A stretch of DNA of 64,000 nucleotides from IMGVR_UViG_3300042922_001182:174985-238984, one strand, 5' to 3'; numbered from the stretch's first letter, positions 1,452-22,963 are shown. Notes: generated by a model from the letters alone, not told the origin. Program-made: numbers and translations.

Positions 1452-2438
1452 ATGAACCAGGACTTCGTTTACAGGACGATCCCCAACGTGGGCATCAACA
1501 GGGACGCGTTCCTCAAGCACACCTTGGTGCGCGAGGCCTCCGACGCCATGCGTTGGAACCGCCTCAACGAGGACGACAAGAGGGAGCTCCAGGCCAAGGT
1601 GGCGGAGTCCCTCTTCTTCACCGTGAAGGACAAGTCGTCGGAGCTCGAATACGACTCCATCGACAAGAGCGGCGGCGATATCGAGGACATGCCCGGCTAC
1701 GACGTGCTGAGCAACAGCATCCACAGCCTGCAGACCATGTACGCCAGCACCAAGTCGGCTCCCAGCGAGGTCAACGACCTCTTCCGGTGCCTGACCAACC
1801 TCCAGAAGTTCAAGCGCTACTTCACCCAGGCCTACGCCAAGGGCGACGAAGCCACCAAGCTGCTCTACCGCAACATGGTGGTGGCGCTGATCGCCGGTAC
1901 CTCCTTCATGGTGGCGACCCACGTCGAGTACATCAAGGAGCCGGGCGGAGAGTTCTCCGCGAAGCTGAAGACCCTGCGCACCATGGAGCGCAGCCTCTTC
2001 CTCGACAACATCGCGAAGTTCAACAGCATGGCCGACTCCGGCCAGCTGAAGACCTTCCTCGACGCCTCCTCCGGCCGCGACAACCTCGTCGGCATGGAGC
2101 TGGTGGCGGTGGGCGTGGGCGCGGTGGCGGTCGTGGGCTTGGTCCTCTGGACCCTGCGCGAGATCGTCTTCACCTACTTCAGGTTCCGAGTCGCCCTCTC
2201 GGAGGAGTTGAAGATGCTGGCGCTGTTCGTCCAGCTCCACTCCAACTCGCTCGCCCCCGAGAAGAAGAACGTGGCCGACAAGCAGCGGGCGATCGTGGAC
2301 GAACTGAATAAGTGGTCCGACCGAATCGCCGTCGATCAGAAGGCGGCTACCAAGGCGGCCGTGGCCGACCTGTCGGACGCGGATCGCGGGGCCACCATGA
2401 CGGCAGTGTCGAGCGCCCCCAGCGGAAACCTGCTGTAA
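1452..2438 (+). CDS. Putative virion/inner-head protein with a hydrophobic segment
   Basis: 328 aa; hydrophobic stretch LVAVGVGAVAVVGLVLWTL; lies in the late operon. Confidence 0.5.
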   Translation: MNQDFVYRTIPNVGINRDAFLKHTLVREASDAMRWNRLNEDDKRELQAKVAESLFFTVKDKSSELEYDSIDKSGGDIEDMPGYDVLSNSIHSLQTMYASTKSAPSEVNDLFRCLTNLQKFKRYFTQAYAKGDEATKLLYRNMVVALIAGTSFMVATHVEYIKEPGGEFSAKLKTLRTMERSLFLDNIAKFNSMADSGQLKTFLDASSGRDNLVGMELVAVGVGAVAVVGLVLWTLREIVFTYFRFRVALSEELKMLALFVQLHSNSLAPEKKNVADKQRAIVDELNKWSDRIAVDQKAATKAAVADLSDADRGATMTAVSSAPSGNLL

Positions 2439-2454
2439 GGGACACCCTCGGGAC

Positions 2455-2466
2455 AACAAAAAGATA
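2455..2466 (+). promoter_or_regulatory. Late-type promoter AACA-N6-TA
   Basis: AACAaaaagaTA. Confidence 0.7.
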
Positions 2467-2532
2467 AGGGTAAGAGGTGACCGCCGCTACGGTCCACTTT
2501 TTTGCATGCAAAAAGAAAGAAGGAGAAGCGGA

Positions 2533-3540
2533 ATGTTTCTGAACGAGAACAACAACACTTTCCGGAACGTGAACACCGGTATCGAGGCCAGCGAGACCAA
2601 CCTGATGGGCGGCTCGGTCGGCATGATGGACATCGCCCTGGAGTCGGAGACGACCTGGAACAACATCTGCGTCGCCATGATGCGTCTGGAGCACACCTCC
2701 TACGTGGAGAAGGACGACGTTCTGATGGAGCGCGGCGTCAAGGCCTTCTGGGGCAAGGTCGTCGCCTTCTTCAAGAAGATGATCGCCAAGGTCAAGGAGT
2801 GGGCCAAGAAGACCTGGAACTCGATCCAGTCGTTCTTCGCCAACTCCAAGAAGTGGCTGGAGCTGAACAAGGCCGCCCTCATGAAGAAGAACCTGAACGG
2901 CTTCAAGTTCTCCATCAACACCTTCCAGAACATCGAGACCGCCAGCGGCAAGATGGACGCCGCCGCTGCCAAGCAGGCCGTCGCCGCCTCCGCCGCTGCT
3001 GGTCGCAGCACGAAGGAAGATGACATGGACGAGTACGACTCGAACTTCCGCGAGGCCTTCCTCCAGGCCATGGGCATCGACGATGACTCCGATGCCCTCG
3101 GCACCGCCTTGAGCCTCTACTTCCGCGCCGACGAAGGCGTCAAGAAGGAGAAGGCCCTGTCGGCGGCCGAGATCGTCAAGGTCCTCGAAGAGACCCCCAA
3201 GGCCCAGCAGCAGGTGGATACCGGCGCCAAGGTGATGGAGCGCCTCGCCGCCCAGGGCATCACCCAGGCCGAGAAGGCCGAAGCCGCCGCCGAGAAGAAG
3301 GACAACGACAAGGGCCGCAAGGAGGCCGCCGGTCACCAGCGTGCCGTCAGCGCGATCCGCAGCCTGCTGGGCCTCCAGCAGCAGGTCCTGTCGGCTCTGG
3401 CCGGTGCCATCGCCGATCGCCACAACCAGTACTTCGCCGCTGCCAAGGCCGCGCTGTCGTACAAGCCCGCGAACGTGAAGGAGTCGACCGACTTCGGCAC
3501 CGACGAGGACGACGTGCTCGACGCGTTCATGCCCATCTAG
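2533..3540 (+). CDS. Putative internal head protein (phiKZ-like), Ala/Lys-rich
   Basis: SD AAGGAG before ATG 2533; own late promoter at 2455-2466; IALE/EASE possible cleavage sites followed by amphipathic GVKAFWGKVVAFFKKMIAKVKEW. Confidence 0.55.
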   Translation: MFLNENNNTFRNVNTGIEASETNLMGGSVGMMDIALESETTWNNICVAMMRLEHTSYVEKDDVLMERGVKAFWGKVVAFFKKMIAKVKEWAKKTWNSIQSFFANSKKWLELNKAALMKKNLNGFKFSINTFQNIETASGKMDAAAAKQAVAASAAAGRSTKEDDMDEYDSNFREAFLQAMGIDDDSDALGTALSLYFRADEGVKKEKALSAAEIVKVLEETPKAQQQVDTGAKVMERLAAQGITQAEKAEAAAEKKDNDKGRKEAAGHQRAVSAIRSLLGLQQQVLSALAGAIADRHNQYFAAAKAALSYKPANVKESTDFGTDEDDVLDAFMPI

Positions 3541-3567
3541 TAGCTCCGGCAAGCAACCAAGGAAACA

Positions 3568-3606
3568 AAGGACCGCATCCCCACTCGGGGATGCGGTCTT
3601 TCCTTT
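3568..3606. terminator. Bidirectional terminator
   Basis: GACCGCATCCCC/GGGGATGCGGTC hairpin between convergent genes. Confidence 0.7.
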
Positions 3607-3609
3607 GCT

Positions 3610-4938
3610 TTATCTCTTCGAGAACGTGCACGTCATCGTGCAGATCATCTCCTCCGTCTGGAGGTTGCGACCGACCCCGTGCAGCGAGAGGGCGTAGTCC
3701 CTCATGACGTACTCGCCGTTGAGCTCCTCCGACCTCTCCTTGTTGCTGAAGATGACGAAGAAGGACTTGTTGGGGGTGAAGATGGAGGGGTCGACGCCGG
3801 AGAAGCTGAAGGCCACCTCGCTGTTGTGCTCCGTGACGTGATGAGCGTGCGTCGTTTCGGCCATCGGGTTGTCGAACCTGTTGTAGAGGACCTTGATCTT
3901 GTCCTCCCCGGCGGCGAAGTTCCCTGGCCCGGCGGCCCCGTCCGTGCTGGTGCCCTCCTGGATGGCCACCTCCCTGATCTGTCCACCCAGCTCCTGGGAG
4001 TCCGAGAGGACGAAGAGCTTGGAGCCGAAGATCTCCTTCGTAGCTCGCCCTCCACGGTTGATGGCCACGGCGTTCTGCACCTTCACCTGGAAGGTCTTGT
4101 TCTTGGTGTCCTCGAAGACGCCGTTGAGCTCCGAAGAGGCGTCCACCTTGTCAGTGACGAAGATGTGGACCTCCCCGTACTCCGTCTTCTCCTTGACCTT
4201 GGAGTCCGCGCCAAGCATGTAGTGGCGGTCCAGGTCGAAGAAGAGGCGCATGCCGCCCTTGTAGATGCCGTAGGCGTCCTGGAGGTAGCGGAGCGAGCTG
4301 ATCACGTTCCCGGGCGGGACCAGGATCTGGTCGTAGACCTTGGTGTTGTCCGGGTTGCCGATCAGCTTGGGGGCGTCCCCGGAGGCGGTCTTCAGCATGT
4401 GAAGGACCACCGGGAGAACCGGGGTCTCCGTGTAGACGTCGTTGAAGATGGCCTTGTTGATGTCCAGGTGCTTCGAGGAGAGAAGCGTGGCCGTCCACTC
4501 GATGTCCCTTCGCTCTTCGGTCTCTACGGCCTGAGCTGGTTGCTCGGTGGGGGAGCGGTCGAAGTCGATGACCCGGAACTCCAGCTGCTTCCAGAGATCG
4601 GTCGGCGGCGGGGGCTCGGAGGCGCTGTTCTCGTCGGAGCTGTCGATGGTCCTATATCGCTTGATGCTGATCACCACCTTGGCGTCGTCGGTGTACTTCT
4701 GGAAGGCCAGCAGGAGCTCGTAGTTCAGCCGTAGGCCTAGGCCGATGACGGGGAAGAACTCGTCCCCGTCCACCTTGCCCTTGACCTGAATCTCCACGAT
4801 GCTCTTGATCAGGCTCATCACCCCGGCGTCCTCCGGGAGGATGAGGTCGGCCTGGGTGATTCGGAACTTGTACCGAGTCAGGTCCCCCAGGACCTTGTTG
4901 GACAGTCTGCCGTCTGCCTCGAAACCGGTGGGTGCCAT
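3610..4938 (-). CDS. Putative tail/baseplate structural protein
   Basis: 442-aa beta-rich ORF, last gene of a reverse operon with a late promoter; hub-like size; family not firmly recognised. Confidence 0.35.
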   Translation of the reverse strand: MAPTGFEADGRLSNKVLGDLTRYKFRITQADLILPEDAGVMSLIKSIVEIQVKGKVDGDEFFPVIGLGLRLNYELLLAFQKYTDDAKVVISIKRYRTIDSSDENSASEPPPPTDLWKQLEFRVIDFDRSPTEQPAQAVETEERRDIEWTATLLSSKHLDINKAIFNDVYTETPVLPVVLHMLKTASGDAPKLIGNPDNTKVYDQILVPPGNVISSLRYLQDAYGIYKGGMRLFFDLDRHYMLGADSKVKEKTEYGEVHIFVTDKVDASSELNGVFEDTKNKTFQVKVQNAVAINRGGRATKEIFGSKLFVLSDSQELGGQIREVAIQEGTSTDGAAGPGNFAAGEDKIKVLYNRFDNPMAETTHAHHVTEHNSEVAFSFSGVDPSIFTPNKSFFVIFSNKERSEELNGEYVMRDYALSLHGVGRNLQTEEMICTMTCTFSKR

Positions 4939-11142: not shown

Positions 11143-11538
11143 ATGAACATCGAGCTCTACCGTTCGGTGACAGGCGGGAGCGGCGACGTCAACGAGGACA
11201 GGGACCGCCTTCTCAAGGGCTTGAGCTTCACCAGCAACTTCAAGCGACTGGAGCAGGCGGTCAACCTCCTTCTCGAATACAGCCTCTTCTCCGTGGCCTC
11301 CAACTTCAGACCGGGTGAACTGGAAGAGTATCCCCAAGAGGCGAAGCTGGAGAGCGTCCGTCTGGACTTCTCCAGCTACGAAGACGCCGAGGCCCTCTAC
11401 GAGAGGATGTCCTCCGGCGCAATCCCCCAGGTGACACCCCTCCGGTACGTCGTCCTGCACCAAGACAGCATCTACCTCTACCTCCACAACGAGGAAGAGC
11501 ACGGTGTCGAGGCCACCGAGTACTCCGTGGCACTGTAA
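11143..11538 (+). CDS. Hypothetical protein
   Basis: 131 aa; SD AGGAGG. Confidence 0.7.
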   Translation: MNIELYRSVTGGSGDVNEDRDRLLKGLSFTSNFKRLEQAVNLLLEYSLFSVASNFRPGELEEYPQEAKLESVRLDFSSYEDAEALYERMSSGAIPQVTPLRYVVLHQDSIYLYLHNEEEHGVEATEYSVAL

Positions 11539-11627
11539 GGGCGAAAGACCTCCGCTGCAAGGCCAATGCGCCTTGCAGCGGAATGGTTCTCCACACTATA
11601 CCAAGACAGGAAAGAGGAAAGACAACC

Positions 11628-13382
11628 ATGTCCCAGAAAAAGAAGACCGACGTGGACAGGAAGATGCCGTTGGAGGAGACCTTTATCACCTCGAACGTCG
11701 TGACCGAGGCCGACACCCGTCGGCAGATCGGGGACACCCTGACCTTCGTCTCCAAGGCGCTCGCCAAGACGCTCGGCCCCTACGGCTCGACCACCATCGT
11801 CCACGATCGCGAGGCCATGGCCCACTTCATGACGAAGGACGGCTACAAGGTGCTCAACTCCATCCAGATCATGGAGGAGGTCCCGCGCACGGTTCTGAAC
11901 ATCATCACCCGCGTCAGCCGGACCCTGGTCCGCACGGTGGGCGACGGATCGACGTCCTCGATCGTGGTTTCCAACAACCTCTACCACCGGATCGCCAAGC
12001 TCCTCCAGAAGTACTCCATCGCCCCCAAGGACATGGTGGACGCGCTCACCCTCGCCTCCCAGATGCTCGCCGACCTGATCGACAAGAAGGCGTACCAGAT
12101 CCCCGACCTCGACACCGAGGAGGGGCTGGAGCTGGTCGCGTGCGTTGCCGCCGTGTCCACCAACAACGACCTGGCGTCGGGCGACCTCGTCGCCAAGATC
12201 TTCCAGGAGATCGGCCGACACGGCTTCGTCACCATCGACGACAACTTCTCCGAGACCGACGAGTACAAGATCACGAACGGCCTGGAGCACAACCGGGGCT
12301 GGATCGACTCTGTCTTCATCAACGACCACAACCGCAGGTCGGTAGAGTTCGAGAACGCATTCGTCCTCCTGGTGGACGACTTCATGACGCAGAACGACCT
12401 CCAGGTGCTGGCTGAGATGATGACAGAGATCGTTGTCAATAACCGCTCTCCCATGGTCATCGTGGCACGCGGCTTCGACGATGCCACGACCAAGTTCTTC
12501 CGGGACAACAAGGTGAGCAGCCCCACGCTCCCCATCTGCGTGGTGGACATCGCCATGTCGAGCAAGGACCACCTGGAGCGCTTCGAGGACATCGCGGCCT
12601 TCATCGGCGGGCGACCCCTCCGCAAGAGCCAGGGCGAGAAGCTGAGCGAAATCAGCCCTGAGGAGCTCGGCATCGTGAAGGCCTTCAGCAGCGACGAGCT
12701 GAAGACGCGCTTCGTCGGCGGTCGGGGCGTCGCCACGGCGAAGCTGAACGAACGCGTGGAAAAGCTCAAGGAGAAGATCCAGGAGCTCTCCGGCGTCAGC
12801 GACCGGGTCAACCGGGACGCCGAGATCCGACTGGTGGAGAAGCGCATCGCCGCGCTGACCTCCGGGATGGCCGTCCTCCGGGTCGGCGGCGCGACGGACT
12901 CCGAGCGGAGCGCCCGCAAGGACCTGTTCGAGGATGCCGTCTACGCCGTCCAGAGCGCCCTGCGCCACGGCATCGTCATGGGCGGCACCCTGGCGGTCCC
13001 GCACATCATCGCCTCCACCCCTACCATCTACGGCGACTTCGCCAACCTGGTGAGGGAGCGCGAGATGCTGCCCACCGTCGAGAAGCTGAACGACTTCAGC
13101 AAGGACTTCCTGGAGTGCATCCTGAAGTCGTTCAAGATGTCGTTCCGCCAGGTGCTGCTCAACTCCGGCATGAAGGAGAACGTCGCCGATGACAACGTGA
13201 ACCGCTGCGTCACCGGGGGCGTAATCTACAACCTCAGCACCCGGGAGTTCGAGCCGTGGGAGGAGACCTCGATCGTGAACTCGGCGGACACGGAGAAGGA
13301 GATCATGAAAGCGGCCTTCTCCATCATCTCGCTCCTCGCAACGTCGAACCAATTCCTTGCCTCCCGGCCGGGGACGCTCTAA
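11628..13382 (+). CDS. groEL: Phage GroEL-like chaperonin
   Basis: KTLGPYG, TKDG, VGDGSTSS and RKDLFEDAVYAVQSALRHGIVMGG motifs; SD before ATG 11628. Confidence 0.9.
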   Translation: MSQKKKTDVDRKMPLEETFITSNVVTEADTRRQIGDTLTFVSKALAKTLGPYGSTTIVHDREAMAHFMTKDGYKVLNSIQIMEEVPRTVLNIITRVSRTLVRTVGDGSTSSIVVSNNLYHRIAKLLQKYSIAPKDMVDALTLASQMLADLIDKKAYQIPDLDTEEGLELVACVAAVSTNNDLASGDLVAKIFQEIGRHGFVTIDDNFSETDEYKITNGLEHNRGWIDSVFINDHNRRSVEFENAFVLLVDDFMTQNDLQVLAEMMTEIVVNNRSPMVIVARGFDDATTKFFRDNKVSSPTLPICVVDIAMSSKDHLERFEDIAAFIGGRPLRKSQGEKLSEISPEELGIVKAFSSDELKTRFVGGRGVATAKLNERVEKLKEKIQELSGVSDRVNRDAEIRLVEKRIAALTSGMAVLRVGGATDSERSARKDLFEDAVYAVQSALRHGIVMGGTLAVPHIIASTPTIYGDFANLVREREMLPTVEKLNDFSKDFLECILKSFKMSFRQVLLNSGMKENVADDNVNRCVTGGVIYNLSTREFEPWEETSIVNSADTEKEIMKAAFSIISLLATSNQFLASRPGTL

Positions 13383-13540
13383 CCTCCGCTTCTCGGGGCC
13401 TCAATGCGAGGCCCTGCGGCAATTTGCGGGAAAAGCGTGCTTTTTTGTTCGGGTCGGGGTATAATGCGGGGGCCGGGGTGTGAGGTAGAGCCTGCTACCC
13501 TCCCCGGCACCCGCCTCGGGGCAATCCCCCGCATCGACTG

Positions 13541-13548
13541 TATATTAT
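13541..13548 (+). promoter_or_regulatory. Early-type motif TATATTAT
   Basis: Intergenic, upstream of 13616. Confidence 0.6.
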
Positions 13549-13615
13549 ACCCTCGATGCGTAACACCGCAAACCCTGGCGGGCAGAACGCACATTCCACA
13601 GGAAGGACAACCGTA

Positions 13616-14446
13616 ATGGCAAGCGAAAGACGGATCTACACCCCGAACGATGAGGTTTGGGATATGACCATTGGTCAGCTCCTGCAGAACCCCACCGGCT
13701 GGGGCTCGGCCGCCGTCGGGAACCGCGAGCGGATCAAGAAGGACCTGGCCGACAGGTTCCAGGTGCTGATGGTGAAGGCCAAGGGCGAGATCGTCCACCA
13801 GGTCTACACCGACGGCGACGACTTCGTGGTTCACCTGCGCGTTCCTTCGGAGACCATCGAGGGTCTCAAGTACGACGTGGTCCTGCGCCTCCACCCCGAG
13901 ACGGCCGACCAAGCCCTATCGGACTACCGGATGACGCTGTTCTCCAACAGCCCTCACTTCGTCTTCACGTACGCGTACGTGCTGAACCAGAAGGGCTCAT
14001 TGGAGGAGACGGTCAAGGGCAAGATGTCCAGCAAGGCGCTGGACGAGGAGCCCAAGATCAGGAACCCGATCGAGACCTGGGGCTTCGAGAAGAGCACGTA
14101 CTTCGCCTGCCTGTACCTCCGGCACTCCATGCGCACCCGCTCTAGGAATGCCATGGCCAAGGACTCCCTCAAGCTCAACCGGAAGCTGCTCCTGGCGAAC
14201 GTCAAAACGTCGGAGGCGAAGATGGTCGAGTACAAGCAGAAGGAGAAGGAGGCCAAGGAGGCCCGGAAGTCCAAGAAGGCGGCTGCGGCCGGTCGTAATG
14301 CCACCAGGGGGCTGGGGCAGGAGGCCGGGGCAGAGGGCCGCGTCGGGAAGGTCAGGGAGGCCCCCGGCGCTGCTGGTCGTCAGGTCAAACAGTCCAAGTC
14401 GGTCGGTAAGACCGGACGGACCCAGCGCAAGCGCCCTACCCGCTAG
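13616..14446 (+). CDS. Hypothetical protein with basic C-terminal tail
   Basis: SD before ATG 13616; early motif TATATTAT at 13541-13548. Confidence 0.75.
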   Translation: MASERRIYTPNDEVWDMTIGQLLQNPTGWGSAAVGNRERIKKDLADRFQVLMVKAKGEIVHQVYTDGDDFVVHLRVPSETIEGLKYDVVLRLHPETADQALSDYRMTLFSNSPHFVFTYAYVLNQKGSLEETVKGKMSSKALDEEPKIRNPIETWGFEKSTYFACLYLRHSMRTRSRNAMAKDSLKLNRKLLLANVKTSEAKMVEYKQKEKEAKEARKSKKAAAAGRNATRGLGQEAGAEGRVGKVREAPGAAGRQVKQSKSVGKTGRTQRKRPTR

Positions 14447-14486
14447 TATTCCCCCTCAACCCCCAGAAGGGAAGGAACATCATCAC

Positions 14487-15938
14487 TTGCAAGAGACCGT
14501 AGAAATCAGAGAATCCGGGAAGATCATCGCGATCGACTTCTCCACCCCGTTCAAGCACGACCTTGAGCACCTTCACGAGTTCAGCCTCGCTCCGAAGCGC
14601 AACTTTGCCAACATCGCCGACTCCATCAAGGAGATCCTCGGCTATGTTATCGGGCGCAGCGAATCCGTGTTGTACGGCTTCCTCCACTTGCAGAACCGTC
14701 TGCAGGACGAGGACGTCATCCTCTCGGAGGAGGAGGTCGCGGACCTGGTGATGTCGGAAATCGTCAACGACGACGCCCGAGCCATCATCGACGAGCACAT
14801 CGAGTCCACCTACTCGGTGAACCTGGACGAGATGACCAAGACGACCAAGAAGGTCAACGAGGAGCTCCAGTTCACCGACATGCACGCCCGCATCATCCTG
14901 AAGGCGAGCATGGCGATGCGCCTGTCCATCCCGGCGCTCACCCAGTATCTACACGTCTACCAACTCGGCAAGTCCGAGAACCTGTTCTTCAACGTCTTCA
15001 GCCGGATCATGGACGCCTTCACGCCGGAGGGTTACGACGCCAAGGCCAAGATCATGAAGCTGACCGGGTCGATCCTGTCGTCCACCCGGTACAGCGACAA
15101 GGTGCTGTGGGCGTACCTGAAGAACATGGCGCTCGACATCCAGACGCTCCACCGGGAGTTCTTCAAGAAGCTGCTCGTCAATGTGCTCCCCAAGCTCAAG
15201 GTCGATCAGAACGTCGTCCCCTACCTCCACGTCACGATCAAGAACCAGATCGACTTCCTGTTCCGCTCCAAGTTCGCCGTCTCCTACAAGTCGGTGAACA
15301 TGATGGAGTCGGACTCGGAGGGCCTGACGGAATTCGACAAGTTCGAGTCCCAGATGGCGATGGTGGACGAGGGCATGTCGGTCATCTCGAAGGACTCCAT
15401 CTCGGAGGAGATCGAGAACACCGCCCGCGCTATCGGAACCACGCTCACGGTCCAGGAGCTGGAGTACTTCCGGGAGCGCATCGTCATCAACAAGACGCAG
15501 ACCAACCTCGTGTTCACCTTCTTCAGCAAGTTCGTGGGCGATTACTTCGACCTGTACAACTGCTCGAAGGACGAGTACGTGGCGCTCTGCGTGCTGACCC
15601 GCAAGTGGCTCCAGAAGAACGGCTACCGCTACCTGTGGCAGTACGTCACCGGTATCCCGGACGAGCTCCGGGAGCGGAAGACGATCAACAAGAAGGAGTT
15701 CATGGACCGACTGCTGTCGTCGCGCCAGTACAAGTCGCTCTTCGACCAGCAGTACAAGCACACGGTCAGCAACATCGTCGACAGCGGCGTCATCCTCAAG
15801 ACGATCGCCACCCTGAAGGCGAACAAGTTCTACAACATCCCGGACATGGAGGAGGGCTCGGACGTCATGGCCGAGATCGATCCCAAGATCGAGGACCTCA
15901 GCGCGGAGTTCTTGAACTTCGTGGCTGCGGCGGTCTAG
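14487..15938 (+). CDS. Candidate non-virion RNAP promoter-specificity (sigma-like) subunit
   Basis: About 483 aa, alpha-helical; TTG start after SD; two genes from the chaperonin as with AR9 gp228/gp226. Synteny inference only. Confidence 0.4.
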   Translation: MQETVEIRESGKIIAIDFSTPFKHDLEHLHEFSLAPKRNFANIADSIKEILGYVIGRSESVLYGFLHLQNRLQDEDVILSEEEVADLVMSEIVNDDARAIIDEHIESTYSVNLDEMTKTTKKVNEELQFTDMHARIILKASMAMRLSIPALTQYLHVYQLGKSENLFFNVFSRIMDAFTPEGYDAKAKIMKLTGSILSSTRYSDKVLWAYLKNMALDIQTLHREFFKKLLVNVLPKLKVDQNVVPYLHVTIKNQIDFLFRSKFAVSYKSVNMMESDSEGLTEFDKFESQMAMVDEGMSVISKDSISEEIENTARAIGTTLTVQELEYFRERIVINKTQTNLVFTFFSKFVGDYFDLYNCSKDEYVALCVLTRKWLQKNGYRYLWQYVTGIPDELRERKTINKKEFMDRLLSSRQYKSLFDQQYKHTVSNIVDSGVILKTIATLKANKFYNIPDMEEGSDVMAEIDPKIEDLSAEFLNFVAAAV

Positions 15939-16014
15939 CGCCGGAACGGCAAAGGAGAGGGGGAGGGCTTCGGCCCTTCCCCAACCAACTTCCCCTAGGA
16001 CAAGGAAACTCAAC

Positions 16015-16512
16015 ATGAACGTATTCGGTAAGAAGCGCTACAACGCCTACACCAGGCCCTGGACCGTGGGTAGCGTGCTGCACATGCTCGGGGACGGCCA
16101 GCTGATCCTGGACGCGCCCTACCAGAGGGGCCACGTCTGGTCCCAGGAGCAGCAGGAGCGGCTCATCGACTCCCTGGCATCCGGCCTGGGCATCCCGCCT
16201 ATCTACATCCGCGAGCTGGATGCGGGCGAGCAGGCGTGGATAGAGGTGATCGACGGCAAGCAGAGGATTACCGCCCTGCAAGCCTTCGTCCGTGGTGAGT
16301 TCGCCTACAAAGGCCACCTCTACCCGGACCTTCCCAGGTCCCAGCAGAGGTTCTTCGAGGCCATCGGCTTCGGGGCGCTCTCCCTAAAGGAGATCACCGA
16401 CGAGGAGGCGTGGGAGGTCTTCAGGCGGGTGAACTTCTGCGGGGTGCCGCAGGACACGCTGTCCTTCGAGGAGAGGCTCCACGACTACCTAGCAAAGAAA
16501 GCAGACCAATGA
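16015..16512 (+). CDS. DUF262 (ParB/Srx-like) domain protein
   Basis: PYQRGHVWS, LIDSL..GLGIPPIY, VIDGKQRITAL motifs. Confidence 0.85.
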   Translation: MNVFGKKRYNAYTRPWTVGSVLHMLGDGQLILDAPYQRGHVWSQEQQERLIDSLASGLGIPPIYIRELDAGEQAWIEVIDGKQRITALQAFVRGEFAYKGHLYPDLPRSQQRFFEAIGFGALSLKEITDEEAWEVFRRVNFCGVPQDTLSFEERLHDYLAKKADQ

Positions 16513-17042: not shown

Positions 17043-17699
17043 ATGCACATGAAGAACTGGGCCTGCTCGCGCTGCGGCCTCAAGGGGGAGAACCGGACCT
17101 TCGCGGACGGCACCGTTGTCAAGCTCTGCGGGGCCCATGTCCTGGAGTCGTGCCACGCCTGCGGGGCCGCGATGGGCGTCGGGTCCATGGCGGTAGCGGT
17201 GGACCACCGCTCGACCGGCGTCCACGGGCTCTGCAAGGGCTGCTCCAAGGCGCTCGTCTTCTCCAGCGACGAGCGGTGGAAGAACTGCATGTTCGGCGGC
17301 CTGCGGATGACGCCCATCGGCCTTCCTCACGTCGTCGCCACCAACATGGAGGATGTGGTCGAGGCGGTCCTGAGTGGCCGGGAGGTCCTGGGCGAAGTGG
17401 AGAACGCTGGCTGGGTGGTCTCGAAGGTCGCCCGCCAGAACGGCCGCAATTCCAACTCGCAGCTGGTCTCCATCGACTTCAGCGCCCCGGAGCCGACCAA
17501 TTTCGAGTTGCCTGAGGAGCTCGTTATCCCGAAGGACCACTACGAGAAGATGGACAAGCTCTTCCAGGATCTGTCGCGAAGCGGGGACCTCCACGTCACT
17601 GCCGTTCAGGGTGGTAAGACTATCGTCTGGGACACCCTGGCCGTCGTTGCGGACGAGTTCGCGAGCTGCGGTGGCCCGGTGCTGGCCGATGGCGAGTAG
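17043..17699 (+). CDS. Hypothetical Cys-rich (Zn-binding) protein
   Basis: CSRC, CHAC, CKGC pairs. Confidence 0.65.
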   Translation: MHMKNWACSRCGLKGENRTFADGTVVKLCGAHVLESCHACGAAMGVGSMAVAVDHRSTGVHGLCKGCSKALVFSSDERWKNCMFGGLRMTPIGLPHVVATNMEDVVEAVLSGREVLGEVENAGWVVSKVARQNGRNSNSQLVSIDFSAPEPTNFELPEELVIPKDHYEKMDKLFQDLSRSGDLHVTAVQGGKTIVWDTLAVVADEFASCGGPVLADGE

Positions 17700-18750
17700 C
17701 GACTCCCTGAGCCTCGGGGAGCTGTTCTACGAGGTGGCCTTGCGCCACCTCGCGGTCTGCTACCCGAACGCGGCCGGTACGGACCTGACCATCCGGTGCC
17801 CCTACTGCGGCGACTCCGACAAGAGCACCCGGAAGGGGCACTTCTACGTCAGCCTCCTGGACGAGCCCCTGCGGTTCTACTGCCAGCGCTGCACCGTCTC
17901 CGGGGTGGTGACGGCTACCACCCTCCGCGATCTCAACCTCCCGGACGACTCCCTGCTCATCCGGGTGTACAAGAGCTGCAAGGAGGCGAAGTACTACCGG
18001 AAGCTCAAGACCAGGGAGACCGGCTTCGCCGACAAGCAGCTGGTGGTCCCGTACCCCCTCGGGACGGCCAGGGAGCTGGAGAACCTGGCCTACATCAACG
18101 AGCGGCTCGGCTCCGACATCACCCTTGCCGAAGCGGCGGAGACCTACCGGGTCCTGCTCAGCTTCAGCGCCTTCTTCAAGGCCAACAAGATCAGCGTCCA
18201 CACCGAGGACCCCGACCGCCTGCGCCTCTACGACAAGGCGTGCGTGGGGTTCCTCAGCTACGACCAGTCCCATGTCGGCTTCCGCTCCCTCAACGAGAGG
18301 TCCACCGGATTCCGTTACCGGACTTACAACATCTTCGGCGAGTACGAGGATGCGTCTCGCTTCTACACCATCAAGTCGGAGGTAGACGTCCTGAAGCAGC
18401 GCCAGCACGTCGTGCTGGCCGAGGGATTCTTCGACATCGTGGGCGTCCACCAGCACGTCTACGGCGGGGAGACGAACGGGTCCATATTCGTCGCCATCAA
18501 CGGCAAGGGCTACAACGTGGTCCTTCTCCACCTCCTCCGCCTGGGCTTCCTGGAGATGGACGTGGACATCTACTCCGACGACGAGCTGGAGCTCGGCTTC
18601 TACAAGAACATGCTCAGCCGTGAGCCCAAGCTAGCCGCGCAGAACTACCGGATACACTACAACCGCAAGTCCAAGGACTTCGGAGTCCCGGCGGACAGCA
18701 TCGCCGTTCGATCCGCCACCCTTAGGATAGAGAGGAACATCAGAAGATGA
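17689..18750 (+). CDS. DNA primase (T4 gp61/DnaG-like)
   Basis: RCPYCGDS..GHFY..YCQRC Zn finger; TOPRIM VLAEGFFD and YSDDE. Confidence 0.75.
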   Translation: MASSDSLSLGELFYEVALRHLAVCYPNAAGTDLTIRCPYCGDSDKSTRKGHFYVSLLDEPLRFYCQRCTVSGVVTATTLRDLNLPDDSLLIRVYKSCKEAKYYRKLKTRETGFADKQLVVPYPLGTARELENLAYINERLGSDITLAEAAETYRVLLSFSAFFKANKISVHTEDPDRLRLYDKACVGFLSYDQSHVGFRSLNERSTGFRYRTYNIFGEYEDASRFYTIKSEVDVLKQRQHVVLAEGFFDIVGVHQHVYGGETNGSIFVAINGKGYNVVLLHLLRLGFLEMDVDIYSDDELELGFYKNMLSREPKLAAQNYRIHYNRKSKDFGVPADSIAVRSATLRIERNIRR

Positions 18751-20944: not shown

Positions 20945-21087
20945 CTCCCGGTGATCTTGTGGAACGCCGTCGCGAGCATCGCCACGGCGACCAGGAGCAT
21001 GACGAATGACGTCGTCAGCTCCTCGTGGTTGTCAGCCACCCAATCCGCCGCCTTGCCGAGGGCGTCCTGCACCACCCGGGGGTACAT
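20935..21087 (-). CDS. Small membrane protein
   Basis: TGATG overlap with the kinase stop; TM SFVMLLVAVAMLATAF. Confidence 0.5.
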   Translation of the reverse strand: MYPRVVQDALGKAADWVADNHEELTTSFVMLLVAVAMLATAFHKITGRWV

Positions 21088-21683
21088 CAGTCGTCCCTCG
21101 GGTCGGCAACACCGGAGGTCATCAGCTCTACGGGGGCCTCCTTGGCGTCGGGCGGCAGGTAGCCGCGCTCCACGAGGAGGTCCACTACCCCCTGGCACTG
21201 GACGTAGGGGCCGTTCTCCTGACGCACGAAGACGAAGTCGCACATGCGCAGGACCCTGGCCTCCTCGGCCACGAAGCCCGCGTCGCGGCCCTCGCGGACC
21301 ACGGGGTTCAGCACGTCCAAGCCCAGGAAGAAGTAGTCCCAGCCGTGTAGCTCGGCCTGCTCGCGGAAGTCCACGAATCCGGCCCGGTTGAGGATGATCG
21401 TGTTGACCCGGTCGGTGTTGACGGACTCGGGCTTGGTGCCGTAGCTGTTACCCAGGAAGTGCGTGCGGCCGATCAGGCCCGACTCCATCTCGTGGTACCG
21501 CTCGCGGTCGATGAACTCGTAGGTGTCGTCCGGCTCGTCGGCCCTCTGCGCCCTGGTGGTGACCTGAACGGTCTTGTTGAACAGGTCCGGGCGCTCCCGC
21601 ACCAGGGCCCGTTCGAGCTCGTTCTTGCCGGAGCCGGAGACCCCGGCGATGATCAGGAAGCGCCTGTCTTGTTGTTGGTTCAT
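21087..21683 (-). CDS. gmk: Guanylate kinase-like protein
   Basis: P-loop GVSGSGK, VTTRAQR..E....YEFI and GNSYGT motifs; late promoter at 21714-21725. Confidence 0.8.
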   Translation of the reverse strand: MNQQQDRRFLIIAGVSGSGKNELERALVRERPDLFNKTVQVTTRAQRADEPDDTYEFIDRERYHEMESGLIGRTHFLGNSYGTKPESVNTDRVNTIILNRAGFVDFREQAELHGWDYFFLGLDVLNPVVREGRDAGFVAEEARVLRMCDFVFVRQENGPYVQCQGVVDLLVERGYLPPDAKEAPVELMTSGVADPRDD

Positions 21684-22306: not shown

Positions 22307-22963
22307 ATGAGTATCGTTATCCCCTACTGTGTTCCTAACACCGAGGTACTGCGTTCCCACATTCCCCTCTGGGCCTTTCCGGCTGTCTCCGAGGCGATCA
22401 AGATGGCCACAGCACAGAACGCCTGGGGGACCGGGAGCGTTGAGGTGATGCTTGACCGCTCGGACGTGCTGCGGTTCGAGGGGGTTGGCATGGCGCGCTC
22501 CCTGGAGGACGGTGGTCCAGAGGACGCGACCTTCGACGAGGAGCGCGGCTGCTGGAGTCTGCTGTTCAACTCCCCGAGCGGTCGCTGGCGGCAGGTGGTC
22601 GTCAACGAACAACATCTCGGTGAGCGAGAGAAGTCAATCCTGATGGACAGGAAGCTGGCCTTCGAGCAGCTCCGGGAGAAGCAGCTGGAGAAGTCCAGGG
22701 TCCTGGTGCGGTGGGCCCTCTCCCAGCAGAGCCTCAACCTGGCCGCCGTGATGGTGGTCCTTGGCGATGTGGGTCTGGATCTCTGTCAGAAGAGCCTGGC
22801 ATTCCTCGGTAACGAGGAGCTGCGCCTCTTCGGGGATATCCTTCTGCGATCCTGCCTCGGTGCGGATCCCCACTCCGACGTCACCGTGGAGGCCACTCGC
22901 CTCCTCTCTGATCTGGACGACTCGCTTGAGTATGTCCAACGGAGAATCATCTCTAAGACCTAA
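22307..22963 (+). CDS. Hypothetical early protein
   Basis: TATATTAT at 22273-22280; SD AAAGGAG. Confidence 0.75.
   Translation: MSIVIPYCVPNTEVLRSHIPLWAFPAVSEAIKMATAQNAWGTGSVEVMLDRSDVLRFEGVGMARSLEDGGPEDATFDEERGCWSLLFNSPSGRWRQVVVNEQHLGEREKSILMDRKLAFEQLREKQLEKSRVLVRWALSQQSLNLAAVMVVLGDVGLDLCQKSLAFLGNEELRLFGDILLRSCLGADPHSDVTVEATRLLSDLDDSLEYVQRRIISKT

What the first reader, a model, noticed from the sequence alone, without database searches (positions are those of the whole stretch)
11628..15938. Candidate sigma-like RNAP subunit two genes from the chaperonin
Seen: gene order is chaperonin, 276-aa ORF, ~483-aa helical ORF, with an early-type motif ahead of the last two. Known: in AR9 the chaperonin is gp228 and the promoter-specificity subunit of non-virion RNAP is gp226. 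Inference: 14487-15938 may be the subunit that reads the AACA-N6-TA promoters. Its pocket residues would indicate whether it needs uracil.
Basis: inference. Interest (0 to 1): 0.6.

Follow-up and report, generated by a model that had tools for sequence, protein, structure and literature searches.

The report
Sigma-like subunit of a jumbo-phage RNA polymerase
The 483-residue gene is the counterpart, in a GC-rich soil jumbo phage, of the AR9 phage protein gp226 that tells the phage's own RNA polymerase where late genes start. This makes it an expected member of a known family, and the only open question is whether this phage writes its DNA with uracil.

Summary
The observation and the interpretation both hold. 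The window is the last 64 kb of a complete 238,984-bp soil virus genome (63.5% GC). It carries chaperonin (11628-13382), a 276-aa gene (13616-14446) and a 483-aa gene (14487-15938), in the same order as AR9 gp228-gp227-gp226 and phiR1-37 g243-g245.

- **Homology.** The 483-aa protein matches AR9 gp226 (PDB 7S01 chain A) by sequence (E 5.8e-46) and by fold (Z 28.5). Weaker matches go to phiKZ gp68 and to sigma region 2.
- **Partners.** All four non-virion RNA polymerase (nvRNAP) core subunit genes are elsewhere in the genome.
- **Promoters.** AACA-N6-TA is strongly enriched in intergenic DNA ahead of portal, sheath, capsid and virion-polymerase genes. The AR9-type early motif ATATTAT-N6-G sits at 13542-13555, ahead of the 276-aa and 483-aa genes.
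- **Uracil question.** The uracil-gating residues are kept (V206, Y210, and R360 in the beta-N subunit). The genome has no thymidylate synthase or dUTPase, and it has a homologue of the PBS1-type dTMP phosphatase. It lacks any dCTP deaminase, which every other complete relative I examined has.

Uracil DNA is therefore likely (about 0.6) but unproven. Verdict: a new member of a known kind, of moderate interest.

The parts
11628..13382 (+). GroEL-like chaperonin (584 aa), counterpart of AR9 gp228
   Evidence: Pfam Cpn60_TCP1 E 3.9e-28. PHROG 5725 E 3e-106. tblastn to AR9 g228: 34% identity, E 7e-110.
13456..13472 (+). G-flanked TATAAT element (core at 13460-13465). It belongs to a third promoter-like class found ahead of all five nvRNAP operons. 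Its function is unknown.
   Evidence: G[GT]TA[TC][AG]AT lies upstream of only 7 of 140 genes that have at least 40 nt of upstream spacer, and those 7 include all five nvRNAP operons. The pattern was defined after seeing the sites, so the p of about 5e-8 is inflated.
13542..13555 (+). AR9-type early (virion RNA polymerase) promoter motif ATATTAT-N6-G, with the predicted transcription start at G13555. It precedes the 276-aa and 483-aa genes.
   Evidence: 9 copies in the window against 0.04 expected. 21 of 21 genome copies are intergenic, and 18 of 21 carry G at N6+1. The AR9 early consensus is AAATATATATTAT-N6-G(+1) (PMC5312081).
13616..14446 (+). 276-aa conserved phage protein of unknown function, counterpart of AR9 gp227 and phiR1-37 g244. 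It is probably co-transcribed with the sigma-like gene.
   Evidence: tblastn to AR9 g227: 37% identity, E 5e-48. PHROG 20045 E 7.5e-54. No Pfam or PDB match. Only viral hypothetical clusters in the Atlas. The phiR1-37 homologue is annotated as a structural protein.
14467..14477 (+). Ribosome-binding site (GAAGGGAAGGA) ahead of the TTG start
   Evidence: Read directly from the sequence.
14487..15938 (+). Sigma-like promoter-specificity subunit of the non-virion RNA polymerase (483 aa), orthologue of AR9 gp226
   Evidence: PDB 7S01_A E 5.8e-46. PHROG 25005 'RNA polymerase' E 1.3e-51. Foldseek E 3e-19 and VIA-align Z 28.5 to 7S01_A. Model pLDDT 80.8.
15036..15278 (+). Sigma-2-like region (residues 184-264)
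   Evidence: Aligns to AR9 gp226 residues 184-264. Weak structural match to sigma-A and sigma-S region 2 over model residues about 124-265, Z 5-6.2.
15099..15125 (+). The '2.1bis' helix (residues 205-213, KVLWAYLKN), with the uracil-gating V206 codon at 15102-15104
   Evidence: Translation. The model has a helix at 205-213. Aligns to AR9 V206, I207 and Y210. The role of V206 is from PMC9209446.
15360..15935 (+). C-terminal domain (residues 292-483), the part shared with phiKZ gp68
   Evidence: VIA-align: AR9 C-terminal domain 7UM1_A Z 15.5, rmsd 2.9 A over 172 residues. phiKZ gp68 8QUE_B Z 13.8, rmsd 3.2 A over 166 residues.
16015..16512 (+). 165-aa GmrSD_N / ParB-like domain protein, inserted between the sigma-like gene and the primase (context only)
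   Evidence: Pfam GmrSD_N E 1.8e-17.
17374..18750 (+). DNA primase, counterpart of AR9 gp225. It closes the conserved gene block.
   Evidence: PHROG 19847 E 6e-72. tblastn to AR9 g225 E 1.5e-42.

Best explanation
The gene at 14487-15938 encodes the dissociable, sigma-like promoter-specificity subunit of this phage's non-virion RNA polymerase (nvRNAP). It is an orthologue of AR9 gp226.

Inferred sequence of events, by analogy with AR9:
1. The injected virion RNA polymerase starts at ATATTAT-N6-G promoters. One of these, at 13542-13555, drives the 276-aa gene and the sigma-like gene as one early transcript. Others drive nvRNAP core subunit genes.
2. The four split beta and beta' subunits (genome 2363-3736, 73653-75590, 83807-85225, 145002-146873) assemble into a core.
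3. The sigma-like subunit docks on the core through its sigma-2-like region, finger and first sigma-4-like helix.
4. Its short 2.1bis helix (residues 205-213), together with beta-N R360, forms the pockets that hold the template-strand bases complementary to AACA at -11 to -8. Transcription starts at the A of TA six bases downstream.
5. This switches on the late genes: portal, sheath, major capsid, prohead protease, tape measure and the virion RNA polymerase subunits.

Because V206 is kept, the -10 pocket should accept uracil and exclude thymine, so the genome is probably dU-substituted (about 0.6).

Shown here: the homology, the fold, the partner genes, the synteny and the promoter statistics. 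Inferred: the binding, the timing and the uracil dependence.
For: - **Sequence.** Full-length match to the solved AR9 gp226 chain, to PHROG 25005, and to gp226 homologues of AR9, PBS1, phiR1-37, LPJP1 and S6-like phages only.
- **Fold.** 7S01_A is the top match.
- **Synteny.** The chaperonin / gp227-like / gp226-like / primase order is conserved in AR9, phiR1-37 and three metagenomic relatives.
- **Partners.** Four nvRNAP core and four virion RNA polymerase subunit homologues are present. 68 of 271 proteins hit AR9. The beta-N subunit matches PDB 7S00_c at E 2.5e-108.
- **Late motif.** AACA-N6-TA occurs 15 times in the window against 3.6 expected. It occurs 36 times in intergenic DNA genome-wide against 5.2 +/- 2.2 in shuffles, with a median of 48 nt to the start codon. 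Every single-base change in AACA, and every other spacer length, drops the count to 8 or fewer.
- **Pocket residues.** V206, Y210 and Y246 are kept, and beta-N R363 is kept as R360. Position 206 is never Gly in 28 homologues.
- **Nucleotide metabolism.** No ThyA, ThyX or dUTPase; these absences are the determinants of uracil DNA named in PMC7824862. A homologue of the PF06941-type dTMP phosphatase is present (PMC12697855).
Against: - There is no direct evidence of expression, of binding to the core, or of transcription start sites. The only public run holding this DNA is the source soil metagenome, and no RNA run holds it.
- Against the uracil clause: the genome has neither a CDA-type nor a trimeric dCTP deaminase. 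AR9 has a CDA-type gene annotated dCMP deaminase (g221), and its PBS1 and phiR1-37 counterparts were shown to be dCTP deaminases (PMC12697855). Four complete relatives and one 25%-complete fragment that I examined each have one or the other.
- No Ugi homologue was found.
- Beta-N K375, which bonds the -10 uracil in AR9, is Asp here. That position also varies in the known dU phages phiR1-37 (Arg) and S6 (Asn).
- The beta' lid that touches the -8 base is 4 residues shorter than in AR9.
Confidence: 0.87

Rival explanations
1. The protein is the same orthologue with the same promoter, but the phage DNA contains thymine. The pocket then tolerates a 5-methyl group despite V206, perhaps because of I207L, beta-N K375D and the shorter beta' lid. 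In that case the enzyme reads 3'-TTGT-5' rather than 3'-UUGU-5'.
For: No dCTP deaminase of either family is present, unlike every other relative examined. No Ugi. Three pocket-neighbouring differences from AR9. The known dU phages of this lineage are low in GC (PMC8460666), whereas this genome is 63.5% GC.
Against: V206 and the whole YSD-V-W-YLKN helix are kept. In AR9 only V206G relaxed the uracil requirement (PMC9209446). No ThyA, ThyX or dUTPase is present, although most jumbo phages with thymine DNA carry a thymidylate synthase. A homologue of the dTMP-destroying phosphatase is kept, which would work against a thymine-DNA phage. A host dCTP deaminase or the ribonucleotide reductase route could supply dUTP.
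Confidence: 0.35
2. It works like phiKZ gp68: an integral fifth subunit needed to assemble an elongation-competent polymerase, rather than a sigma-like factor that can come off the core.
For: The C-terminal domain superimposes on gp68 (Z 13.8, rmsd 3.2 A over 166 residues). gp68 and gp226 are thought to share an ancestor (PMC9209446).
Against: Sequence similarity is to gp226 (E 5.8e-46) and not to gp68, which gave no phmmer hit at E up to 10. The promoters are of the AR9 type (AACA-N6-TA), not the phiKZ late TATG type. In AR9 the core assembles and elongates without gp226.
Confidence: 0.08
3. It is a helical phage protein with another role (structural or regulatory), and it only neighbours the chaperonin by descent.
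For: No Pfam family matches it. No experiment exists for this genome.
Against: Full-length homology and a fold match to a subunit seen in crystal and cryo-EM structures of the holoenzyme. It co-occurs with the complete set of partner subunits and with the cognate promoter motif.
Confidence: 0.02

Closest known systems
Bacillus phage AR9 / PBS1 gp226, promoter-specificity subunit of the non-virion RNA polymerase (PDB 7S01, 7UM0, 7UM1)
   Same: - Length: 483 against 464 aa.
- Two-domain fold.
- The 2.1bis helix with V206 and Y210.
- Partner subunits.
- Gene neighbourhood: chaperonin, gp227-like, gp226-like, primase.
- Early promoter upstream.
- Late promoter word AACA-N6-TA with the same spacing.
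   Different: - Only 28% identity.
- The genome is 63.5% GC (GC3 about 0.94), whereas the characterised uracil-DNA relatives are described as low in GC (LPJP1 25.9%; PMC8460666).
- The early promoter lies before the gp227-like gene instead of between the two genes.
- Residue changes: I207L, S245P, F261S, Y263F.
- Beta-N K375 is Asp.
- The beta' lid is 4 residues shorter.
- No dCTP deaminase, ribonucleotide reductase or Ugi homologues in the genome.
Yersinia phage phiR1-37 g245 and the Staphylococcus S6-like / Listeria LPJP1 homologues
   Same: Same family (E 2e-32 to 1e-11) and the same synteny in phiR1-37. All are jumbo phages with shown or suspected dU-DNA.
   Different: These are low-GC phages of known hosts. 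The host of this phage is unknown, and its source is a soil metagenome.
phiKZ gp68 (PDB 7OGP, 8QUE, 9RJS)
   Same: The C-terminal domain fold (Z 13.8) and the position as fifth subunit of a split-subunit phage RNA polymerase.
   Different: No detectable sequence similarity. gp68 is needed for core assembly, and phiKZ nvRNAP reads thymine-containing double-stranded DNA at TATG promoters.
Bacterial sigma-70 family (sigma-E, sigma-A region 2)
   Same: A weak structural resemblance of residues about 124-265 to sigma region 2 (Z 5-6.2), and the role of choosing promoters through a -10-like element.
   Different: No sigma Pfam domain is detected. In AR9 the protein reads the template strand, not the non-template strand. 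The N- and C-terminal domains are unrelated to sigma.

Membership tests
AR9 gp226-type nvRNAP promoter-specificity subunit (PHROG 25005) | Full-length sequence homology to gp226 | tested here: met
   phmmer against PDB 7S01_A: E 5.8e-46, residues 5-455 aligned to 8-445. PHROG 25005 E 1.3e-51. tblastn 28% identity over 96% of the query.
AR9 gp226-type nvRNAP promoter-specificity subunit (PHROG 25005) | Two-domain fold of gp226 (N-terminal domain with sigma-2-like part, finger, C-terminal domain) | tested here: met
   AF2 model pLDDT 80.8, with the finger region 265-296 at low confidence. Foldseek to 7S01_A E 3e-19. VIA-align Z 28.5 over 428 residues; C-terminal domain alone Z 15.5, rmsd 2.9 A.
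AR9 gp226-type nvRNAP promoter-specificity subunit (PHROG 25005) | 2.1bis helix with the conserved valine (V206) and Y210 | tested here: met
   YSDKVLWAYLKNM aligns with AR9 YSDVVIWTYLKNM. Position 206 across 28 homologues: V 20, I 3, T 2, A 1, R 1, P 1, never G.
AR9 gp226-type nvRNAP promoter-specificity subunit (PHROG 25005) | Co-occurrence with the four split beta / beta' nvRNAP core genes | tested here: met
   tblastn against AR9 g270, g089, g105 and g154: E 3e-77 to 2e-150. Beta-N against 7S00_c: E 2.5e-108.
AR9 gp226-type nvRNAP promoter-specificity subunit (PHROG 25005) | Cognate late promoter AACA-N6-T(A/G) ahead of late genes | tested here: met
   36 intergenic copies against 5.2 +/- 2.2 in shuffles. 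28 have a same-strand start within 150 nt. They precede the portal, sheath, capsid, protease, tape measure and virion RNA polymerase genes. Specific at all four bases and for the 6-nt spacer.
AR9 gp226-type nvRNAP promoter-specificity subunit (PHROG 25005) | Binds the core and confers promoter-specific initiation from the template strand | not testable with these tools
   Needs biochemistry. No complex prediction was run, because orthology to a solved holoenzyme already carries the claim.
AR9 gp226-type nvRNAP promoter-specificity subunit (PHROG 25005) | Requires deoxyuridine at -10 and -11 | not testable with these tools
   Only the predictor residues can be read: V206 is kept, beta-N R363 is kept, and K375 is Asp.
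Bacterial sigma-70 family | Sigma-70 region 2 / region 4 sequence signatures | tested here: not met
   Pfam scan returned no family at E up to 0.01.
Bacterial sigma-70 family | Sigma-2 fold | tested here: inconclusive
   Sigma-A and sigma-S chains align to model residues about 124-265 with Z 5-6.2 and rmsd 3.4-5 A. This is within the range that helical models reach by chance.
phiKZ gp68 | Sequence homology | tested here: not met
   No gp68 chain among the phmmer hits at E up to 10.
phiKZ gp68 | Shared C-terminal domain fold | tested here: met
   8QUE_B Z 13.8, rmsd 3.2 A over 166 residues. 7OGR_B Z 13.3. Foldseek E 1.5e-5.
dU-DNA jumbo phages (PBS1/AR9, phiR1-37 type) | No thymidylate synthase (ThyA or ThyX) and no dUTPase | tested here: met
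   Six-frame searches of the complete genome with PF00303, PF02511 and PF00692 found nothing, while the control genomes were detected. The criterion is from PMC7824862.
dU-DNA jumbo phages (PBS1/AR9, phiR1-37 type) | Phage-encoded dCTP deaminase supplying dUTP | tested here: not met
   PF00383 and PF22769 gave no hit. tblastn with AR9 g221 and with the trimeric deaminases of two high-GC relatives gave no hit. No HxE...PCxxC motif in any frame. The relatives do have one.
dU-DNA jumbo phages (PBS1/AR9, phiR1-37 type) | Enzyme that removes thymidine nucleotides (dTMP phosphatase or dTTP pyrophosphatase) | tested here: inconclusive
   Genome 137991-138689 (-) is 31% identical (E 2e-28) to AR9 g151, a PF06941-type deoxyribonucleotidase. 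PBS1 Dtm belongs to this family. The direct Pfam NT5C score is below the cut-off (16.6 against 24.8 bits). Substrate preference is unknown.
dU-DNA jumbo phages (PBS1/AR9, phiR1-37 type) | Deoxyuridine in virion DNA | not testable with these tools
   Assembled sequence reads U as T.

The most novel reading that the evidence does not exclude
This GC-rich soil phage keeps the uracil-gating valine, the AACA promoters, a dTMP-phosphatase homologue and the absence of thymidylate synthase. Yet, alone among the complete relatives examined, it has no dCTP deaminase of either family. Two readings follow. Either it builds dU-DNA by a route not yet described (host dCTP deaminase plus an unknown dUTPase inhibitor, or one of the unannotated genes at the locus where relatives carry the deaminase). 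Or it is a natural thymine-DNA member in which a V206 pocket reads thymine, which would break the published valine rule. In addition, all five nvRNAP operons carry a sigma-70-like G-flanked TATAAT element. This could mean that the host polymerase helps to launch the phage polymerase, unlike the host-independent scheme described for AR9.
Probability: 0.3. Interest if true: 0.65.

Novelty: new member of a known kind. Interest (0 to 1): 0.4.

Why it matters
gp226 is the only known sigma-like factor that reads the template strand and senses uracil. This orthologue is only 28% identical to it and comes from a 63.5% GC genome, yet it keeps the same promoter word, the same spacing and the same gating residues. 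That shows the mechanism extends far beyond the low-GC phages of Bacillus, Staphylococcus, Listeria and Yersinia where it was described. It also gives a natural set of substitutions near the pocket (I207L, beta-N K375D, shorter beta' lid) for testing which contacts really matter. For annotation, the pair of motifs ATATTAT-N6-G and AACA-N6-TA gives a ready early/late transcription map of this uncultured phage. The missing dCTP deaminase makes it a useful test of the published proposal that dU-DNA phages can be predicted from genomic and metagenomic data (PMC12697855).

Tried and rejected
- **Sigma-70 identity.** Pfam found no family for the 483-aa protein, so it cannot be filed as a sigma-70 member.
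- **Sigma-70 promoter scan.** A scan of 11400-16100 found none under its criteria, and the terminator-like hits were at chance level.
- **UDG inhibitor.** tblastn with AR9 Ugi found nothing, and a list of small acidic proteins gave no convincing candidate.
- **dCTP deaminase.** Two Pfam families, three protein queries and a motif scan were all negative.
- **Deaminase locus.** Pfam on nine small genes in the interval where relatives carry the deaminase found nothing above noise. The Atlas search on the 218-aa gene at 22307-22963 was also empty.
- **Right half of the window.** Pfam on 20 larger genes found no family.
- **Host.** A scan of 185,579 bacterial and archaeal genomes for relatives found none, so no host clue came from co-assembled or integrated copies. 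There are no tRNA genes in the window.
- **Expression.** The only public run holding the stretch is the source soil metagenome, kept as contigs, and no RNA run holds it.
- **The 276-aa protein.** The PDB sequence search and the Atlas search gave no function.
- **Not run.** The exhaustive representative-protein search was skipped because the family scans had already identified the protein. Complex prediction was skipped because orthology to a solved holoenzyme already carries the binding claim.

Full report
**What the window is.** The window is bases 174985-238984 of a complete 238,984-bp IMG/VR virus record with an exact 127-bp direct terminal repeat. It is 63.5% GC, with GC3 of 0.85-0.97 in real genes. 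The only public run that holds it is a soil metagenome, which is probably its source. Of my 271 GC3-based gene calls, 68 have tblastn matches in Bacillus phage AR9, with long stretches in the same order. The phage is therefore an AR9/PBS1-like jumbo phage with an unusually GC-rich genome.

**The observation.** It is correct in every detail.
- The chaperonin lies at 11628-13382 (584 aa; Cpn60_TCP1 E 3.9e-28; PHROG chaperonin E 3e-106).
- A 276-aa ORF lies at 13616-14446, and a 483-aa ORF at 14487-15938. The latter has a TTG start preceded by GAAGGGAAGGA. The public protein collection holds the same 483-aa product.
- The AlphaFold2 model, built on 26 homologues (pLDDT 80.8), is almost entirely helical.
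- An early-type motif, ATATTAT-N6-G, sits at 13542-13555. No such motif lies in the 40-nt gap between the two ORFs.
- In AR9, gp228 is indeed the chaperonin, gp227 a 274-aa hypothetical protein, gp226 the non-virion RNA polymerase (nvRNAP) subunit and gp225 the primase. phiR1-37 has the same order.

**Identity of the 483-aa protein.**
- phmmer against all PDB chains gives one real hit, AR9 gp226 (7S01 chain A), at E 5.8e-46, aligning residues 5-455 with 8-445.
- PHROG 25005 ('RNA polymerase') matches at E 1.3e-51.
- In 50,697 phage records, tblastn hits only the gp226 homologues of AR9/PBS1-like Bacillus phages, phiR1-37, Listeria LPJP1 and S6-like Staphylococcus phages.
- Foldseek on the model puts 7S01_A first (E 3e-19), followed by phiKZ gp68 (8QUE_B, E 1.5e-5).
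- VIA-align gives Z 28.5 over 428 residues for 7S01_A. The AR9 C-terminal domain alone gives Z 15.5 (rmsd 2.9 A over 172 residues), and gp68 gives Z 13.8 (rmsd 3.2 A over 166 residues).
- Sigma-A and sigma-S region 2 give only Z 5-6.2 over model residues about 124-265. This is as weak as Fraser et al. describe for gp226 itself (PMC9209446).

**Partners.** The genome encodes homologues of all four nvRNAP core pieces:
- beta'N at 2363-3736;
- beta-C at 73653-75590;
- beta-N at 83807-85225, which matches PDB 7S00_c at E 2.5e-108;
- beta'C at 145002-146873.

It also encodes four virion RNA polymerase pieces.

**Promoters: a functional read-out from the genome itself.** The AR9 early consensus is AAATATATATTAT-N6-G(+1) and the late consensus is AACA-N6-T(A/G) (PMC5312081).
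- *Early motif.* All 21 ATATTAT copies in this genome are intergenic. Eighteen have a same-strand gene start within 150 nt, and 18 carry G at N6+1. Shuffles give 0.22 intergenic copies against 18 observed, and 0.04 in the window against 9 observed.
- *Late motif.* AACA-N6-TA has 36 fully intergenic copies, against 5.2 +/- 2.2 in shuffles. Twenty-eight have a same-strand start within 150 nt, at a median of 48 nt. The window holds 15 copies against 3.6 expected.
- *Specificity.* Any single substitution in AACA leaves 8 or fewer intergenic copies. Spacers of 4, 5, 7 or 8 nt leave 1-7.
- *Downstream genes.* Late motifs precede the portal, sheath, major capsid, prohead protease, tape measure and virion RNA polymerase genes. 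Early motifs precede the beta-C gene, the gene just ahead of beta'C, and the 276-aa / 483-aa pair.
- This is the AR9 logic: the virion enzyme makes the nvRNAP, and the nvRNAP with its specificity subunit makes virions.
- One difference from AR9: there the early promoter lies between gp227 and gp226, whereas here it lies before the gp227-like gene, so the two are probably co-transcribed.

**Pocket residues.** In AR9 the -10 uracil is wedged between gp226 I207 and beta-N R363. It bonds to the main chain of V206 and I207 and to beta-N K375. The V206 side chain would clash with a 5-methyl group, and V206G makes the enzyme accept thymine. Y210 stacks on the -9 G (PMC9209446).
- Here the helix reads YSDKVLWAYLKNM against AR9 YSDVVIWTYLKNM.
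- Kept: V206, Y210 and Y246.
- Changed: I207 to L, S245 to P, and F261 and Y263 (main-chain contacts) to S and F.
- Among 28 homologues, position 206 is V 20, I 3, T 2, A 1, R 1 and P 1, and never G. IMG/VR relatives spanning 23-66% GC show V, T or S.
- Beta-N R363 is kept, as R360. K375 aligns with Asp, but that position also varies in the known dU phages phiR1-37 (Arg) and S6 (Asn).
- The beta' lid segment that touches the -8 base is 4 residues shorter than in AR9. Even so, the genome's own promoters still specify A at -8 on the non-template strand.
- By the published rule, the pocket predicts uracil specificity.

**Does the genome use uracil?**
- *For.* The pocket residues point that way. 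There is no ThyA, ThyX or dUTPase in a complete genome, and these absences are the determinants listed by Iyer et al. (PMC7824862). There is a 31%-identical homologue (E 2e-28) of AR9 g151, a PF06941-type deoxyribonucleotidase, the family to which the PBS1 dTMP phosphatase belongs. All characterised phages carrying a gp226 homologue have, or appear to have, dU-DNA.
- *Against.* There is no dCTP deaminase. The three characterised dU phages use a CDA-family enzyme (PMC12697855).
  - Three complete low- or mid-GC relatives also carry a CDA-family gene.
  - Two high-GC relatives instead carry a trimeric dCTP deaminase (PF22769, E 6e-19 and 4e-25; PDB dCTP deaminases at E 4e-15). One of these relatives is a complete genome and the other a 25%-complete fragment. 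The gene lies just downstream of the primase, in the same neighbourhood as the AR9 enzyme.
  - This genome has neither type, by Pfam, tblastn or motif search. The corresponding interval holds only unannotatable genes.
  - No Ugi homologue was found.
- *Weighing.* A host dCTP deaminase or the ribonucleotide reductase route could supply dUTP. I put uracil DNA at about 0.6.

**Comparison and novelty.** The protein passes every testable membership criterion of the gp226 family. It fails the sequence criteria for sigma-70 and for phiKZ gp68, which it resembles only in fold. The family is already populated in metagenomes. The word-based protein search found 27 proteins, the query's own record among them, with the closest relative 45-46% identical and located on a 34% GC contig with the same synteny and an ATATTAT-N6-G motif upstream. 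IMG/VR holds 14 loci, including other high-GC ones. No relative was found in 185,579 prokaryote genomes. This is a new member of a known kind. Its interest lies in the extreme GC content, the pocket-adjacent substitutions and the missing deaminase.

**Limits.** There are no expression data, no host and no chemistry. The gene calls are my own GC3-based calls. The promoter classes are inferred from motif statistics and from analogy with AR9. The third promoter-like class was defined after seeing the sites.

Noticed in passing
window 13456-13472; genome 1652, 73537, 83733, 144956, 156893, 166521: A third promoter-like element, G[GT]TA[TC][AG]AT, has G-rich flanks. A TTGCG(C/T)-like hexamer lies 16-17 nt upstream in three cases, and a GC-rich hairpin just downstream in several. 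It lies upstream of only 7 of 140 genes with at least 40 nt of spacer, and these include all five nvRNAP operons. It could be a host sigma-70 promoter or a separate phage class. The statistic was computed after seeing the sites.
   Followed up: partly
L032:9171-9815 (+), L033:3800-4504 (-); compare AR9 g221 in L002:12198-12728: Among phages carrying a gp226 homologue, the dCTP deaminase seems to have been replaced by an unrelated enzyme at a conserved locus downstream of the primase. AR9 and three low- or mid-GC relatives have the CDA family. Two high-GC relatives have the trimeric PF22769 family. The window's genome has neither. The trimeric type is not among the enzymes characterised for dU phages in PMC12697855.
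   Followed up: partly
genome 2363-3736 (beta'N), residues aligned to AR9 gp270 161-177: The beta' lid, which in AR9 is 3 residues longer than in bacteria and tucks in the -8 uracil, is 4 residues shorter here (RPARMM----GKSFVFD against RPATLLTGSKGKVLAFD).
   Followed up: partly
window 21087-21683 (-): A P-loop guanylate-kinase-like gene (198 aa; Pfam Guanylate_kin E 7.6e-12; 36% identical to AR9 g238) was missed by my gene caller because of an overlapping call. It is a candidate deoxynucleotide kinase.
   Followed up: partly
window about 26400-59600: Twenty of the larger genes in this stretch have no Pfam family, and 18 of the 20 have no AR9 counterpart. It is a long block of dark matter at the right end of the genome.
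   Followed up: partly
window 14487-15938 and the whole genome: GC3 is about 0.94, but the sigma-like protein keeps an AT-lineage amino-acid make-up (G+A+R+P 15%, F+Y+M+I+N+K 33%), and its closest relative sits on a 34% GC contig. This suggests a fairly recent shift to high GC, carried mostly by synonymous sites.
   Followed up: no
window 16015-16512: A 165-aa protein with only the N-terminal GmrSD / ParB-like (DUF262) domain is inserted between the sigma-like gene and the primase. phiR1-37 has an unrelated small gene at that position.
   Followed up: no
genome 139669-140415 (-) and 141017-142252 (-): The catalytic DNA polymerase subunit (AR9 g152) is split into two ORFs about 600 bp apart. 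A 61-aa ORF and a one-mismatch early motif lie in the gap. This could be an intron or a true split.
   Followed up: no
L032:4854 (+), L033:9881 (-): The two high-GC relatives carry ATATAATT-N5-G directly before their gp226 homologues. The early promoter word therefore drifts (ATATTAT to ATATAAT) within the family while the gene it drives stays the same.
   Followed up: no
genome 137991-138689 (-): This gene is a homologue of AR9 g151, a PF06941-type deoxyribonucleotidase, the family of the PBS1 dTMP phosphatase. It lies beside the DNA polymerase genes, as in AR9.
   Followed up: partly
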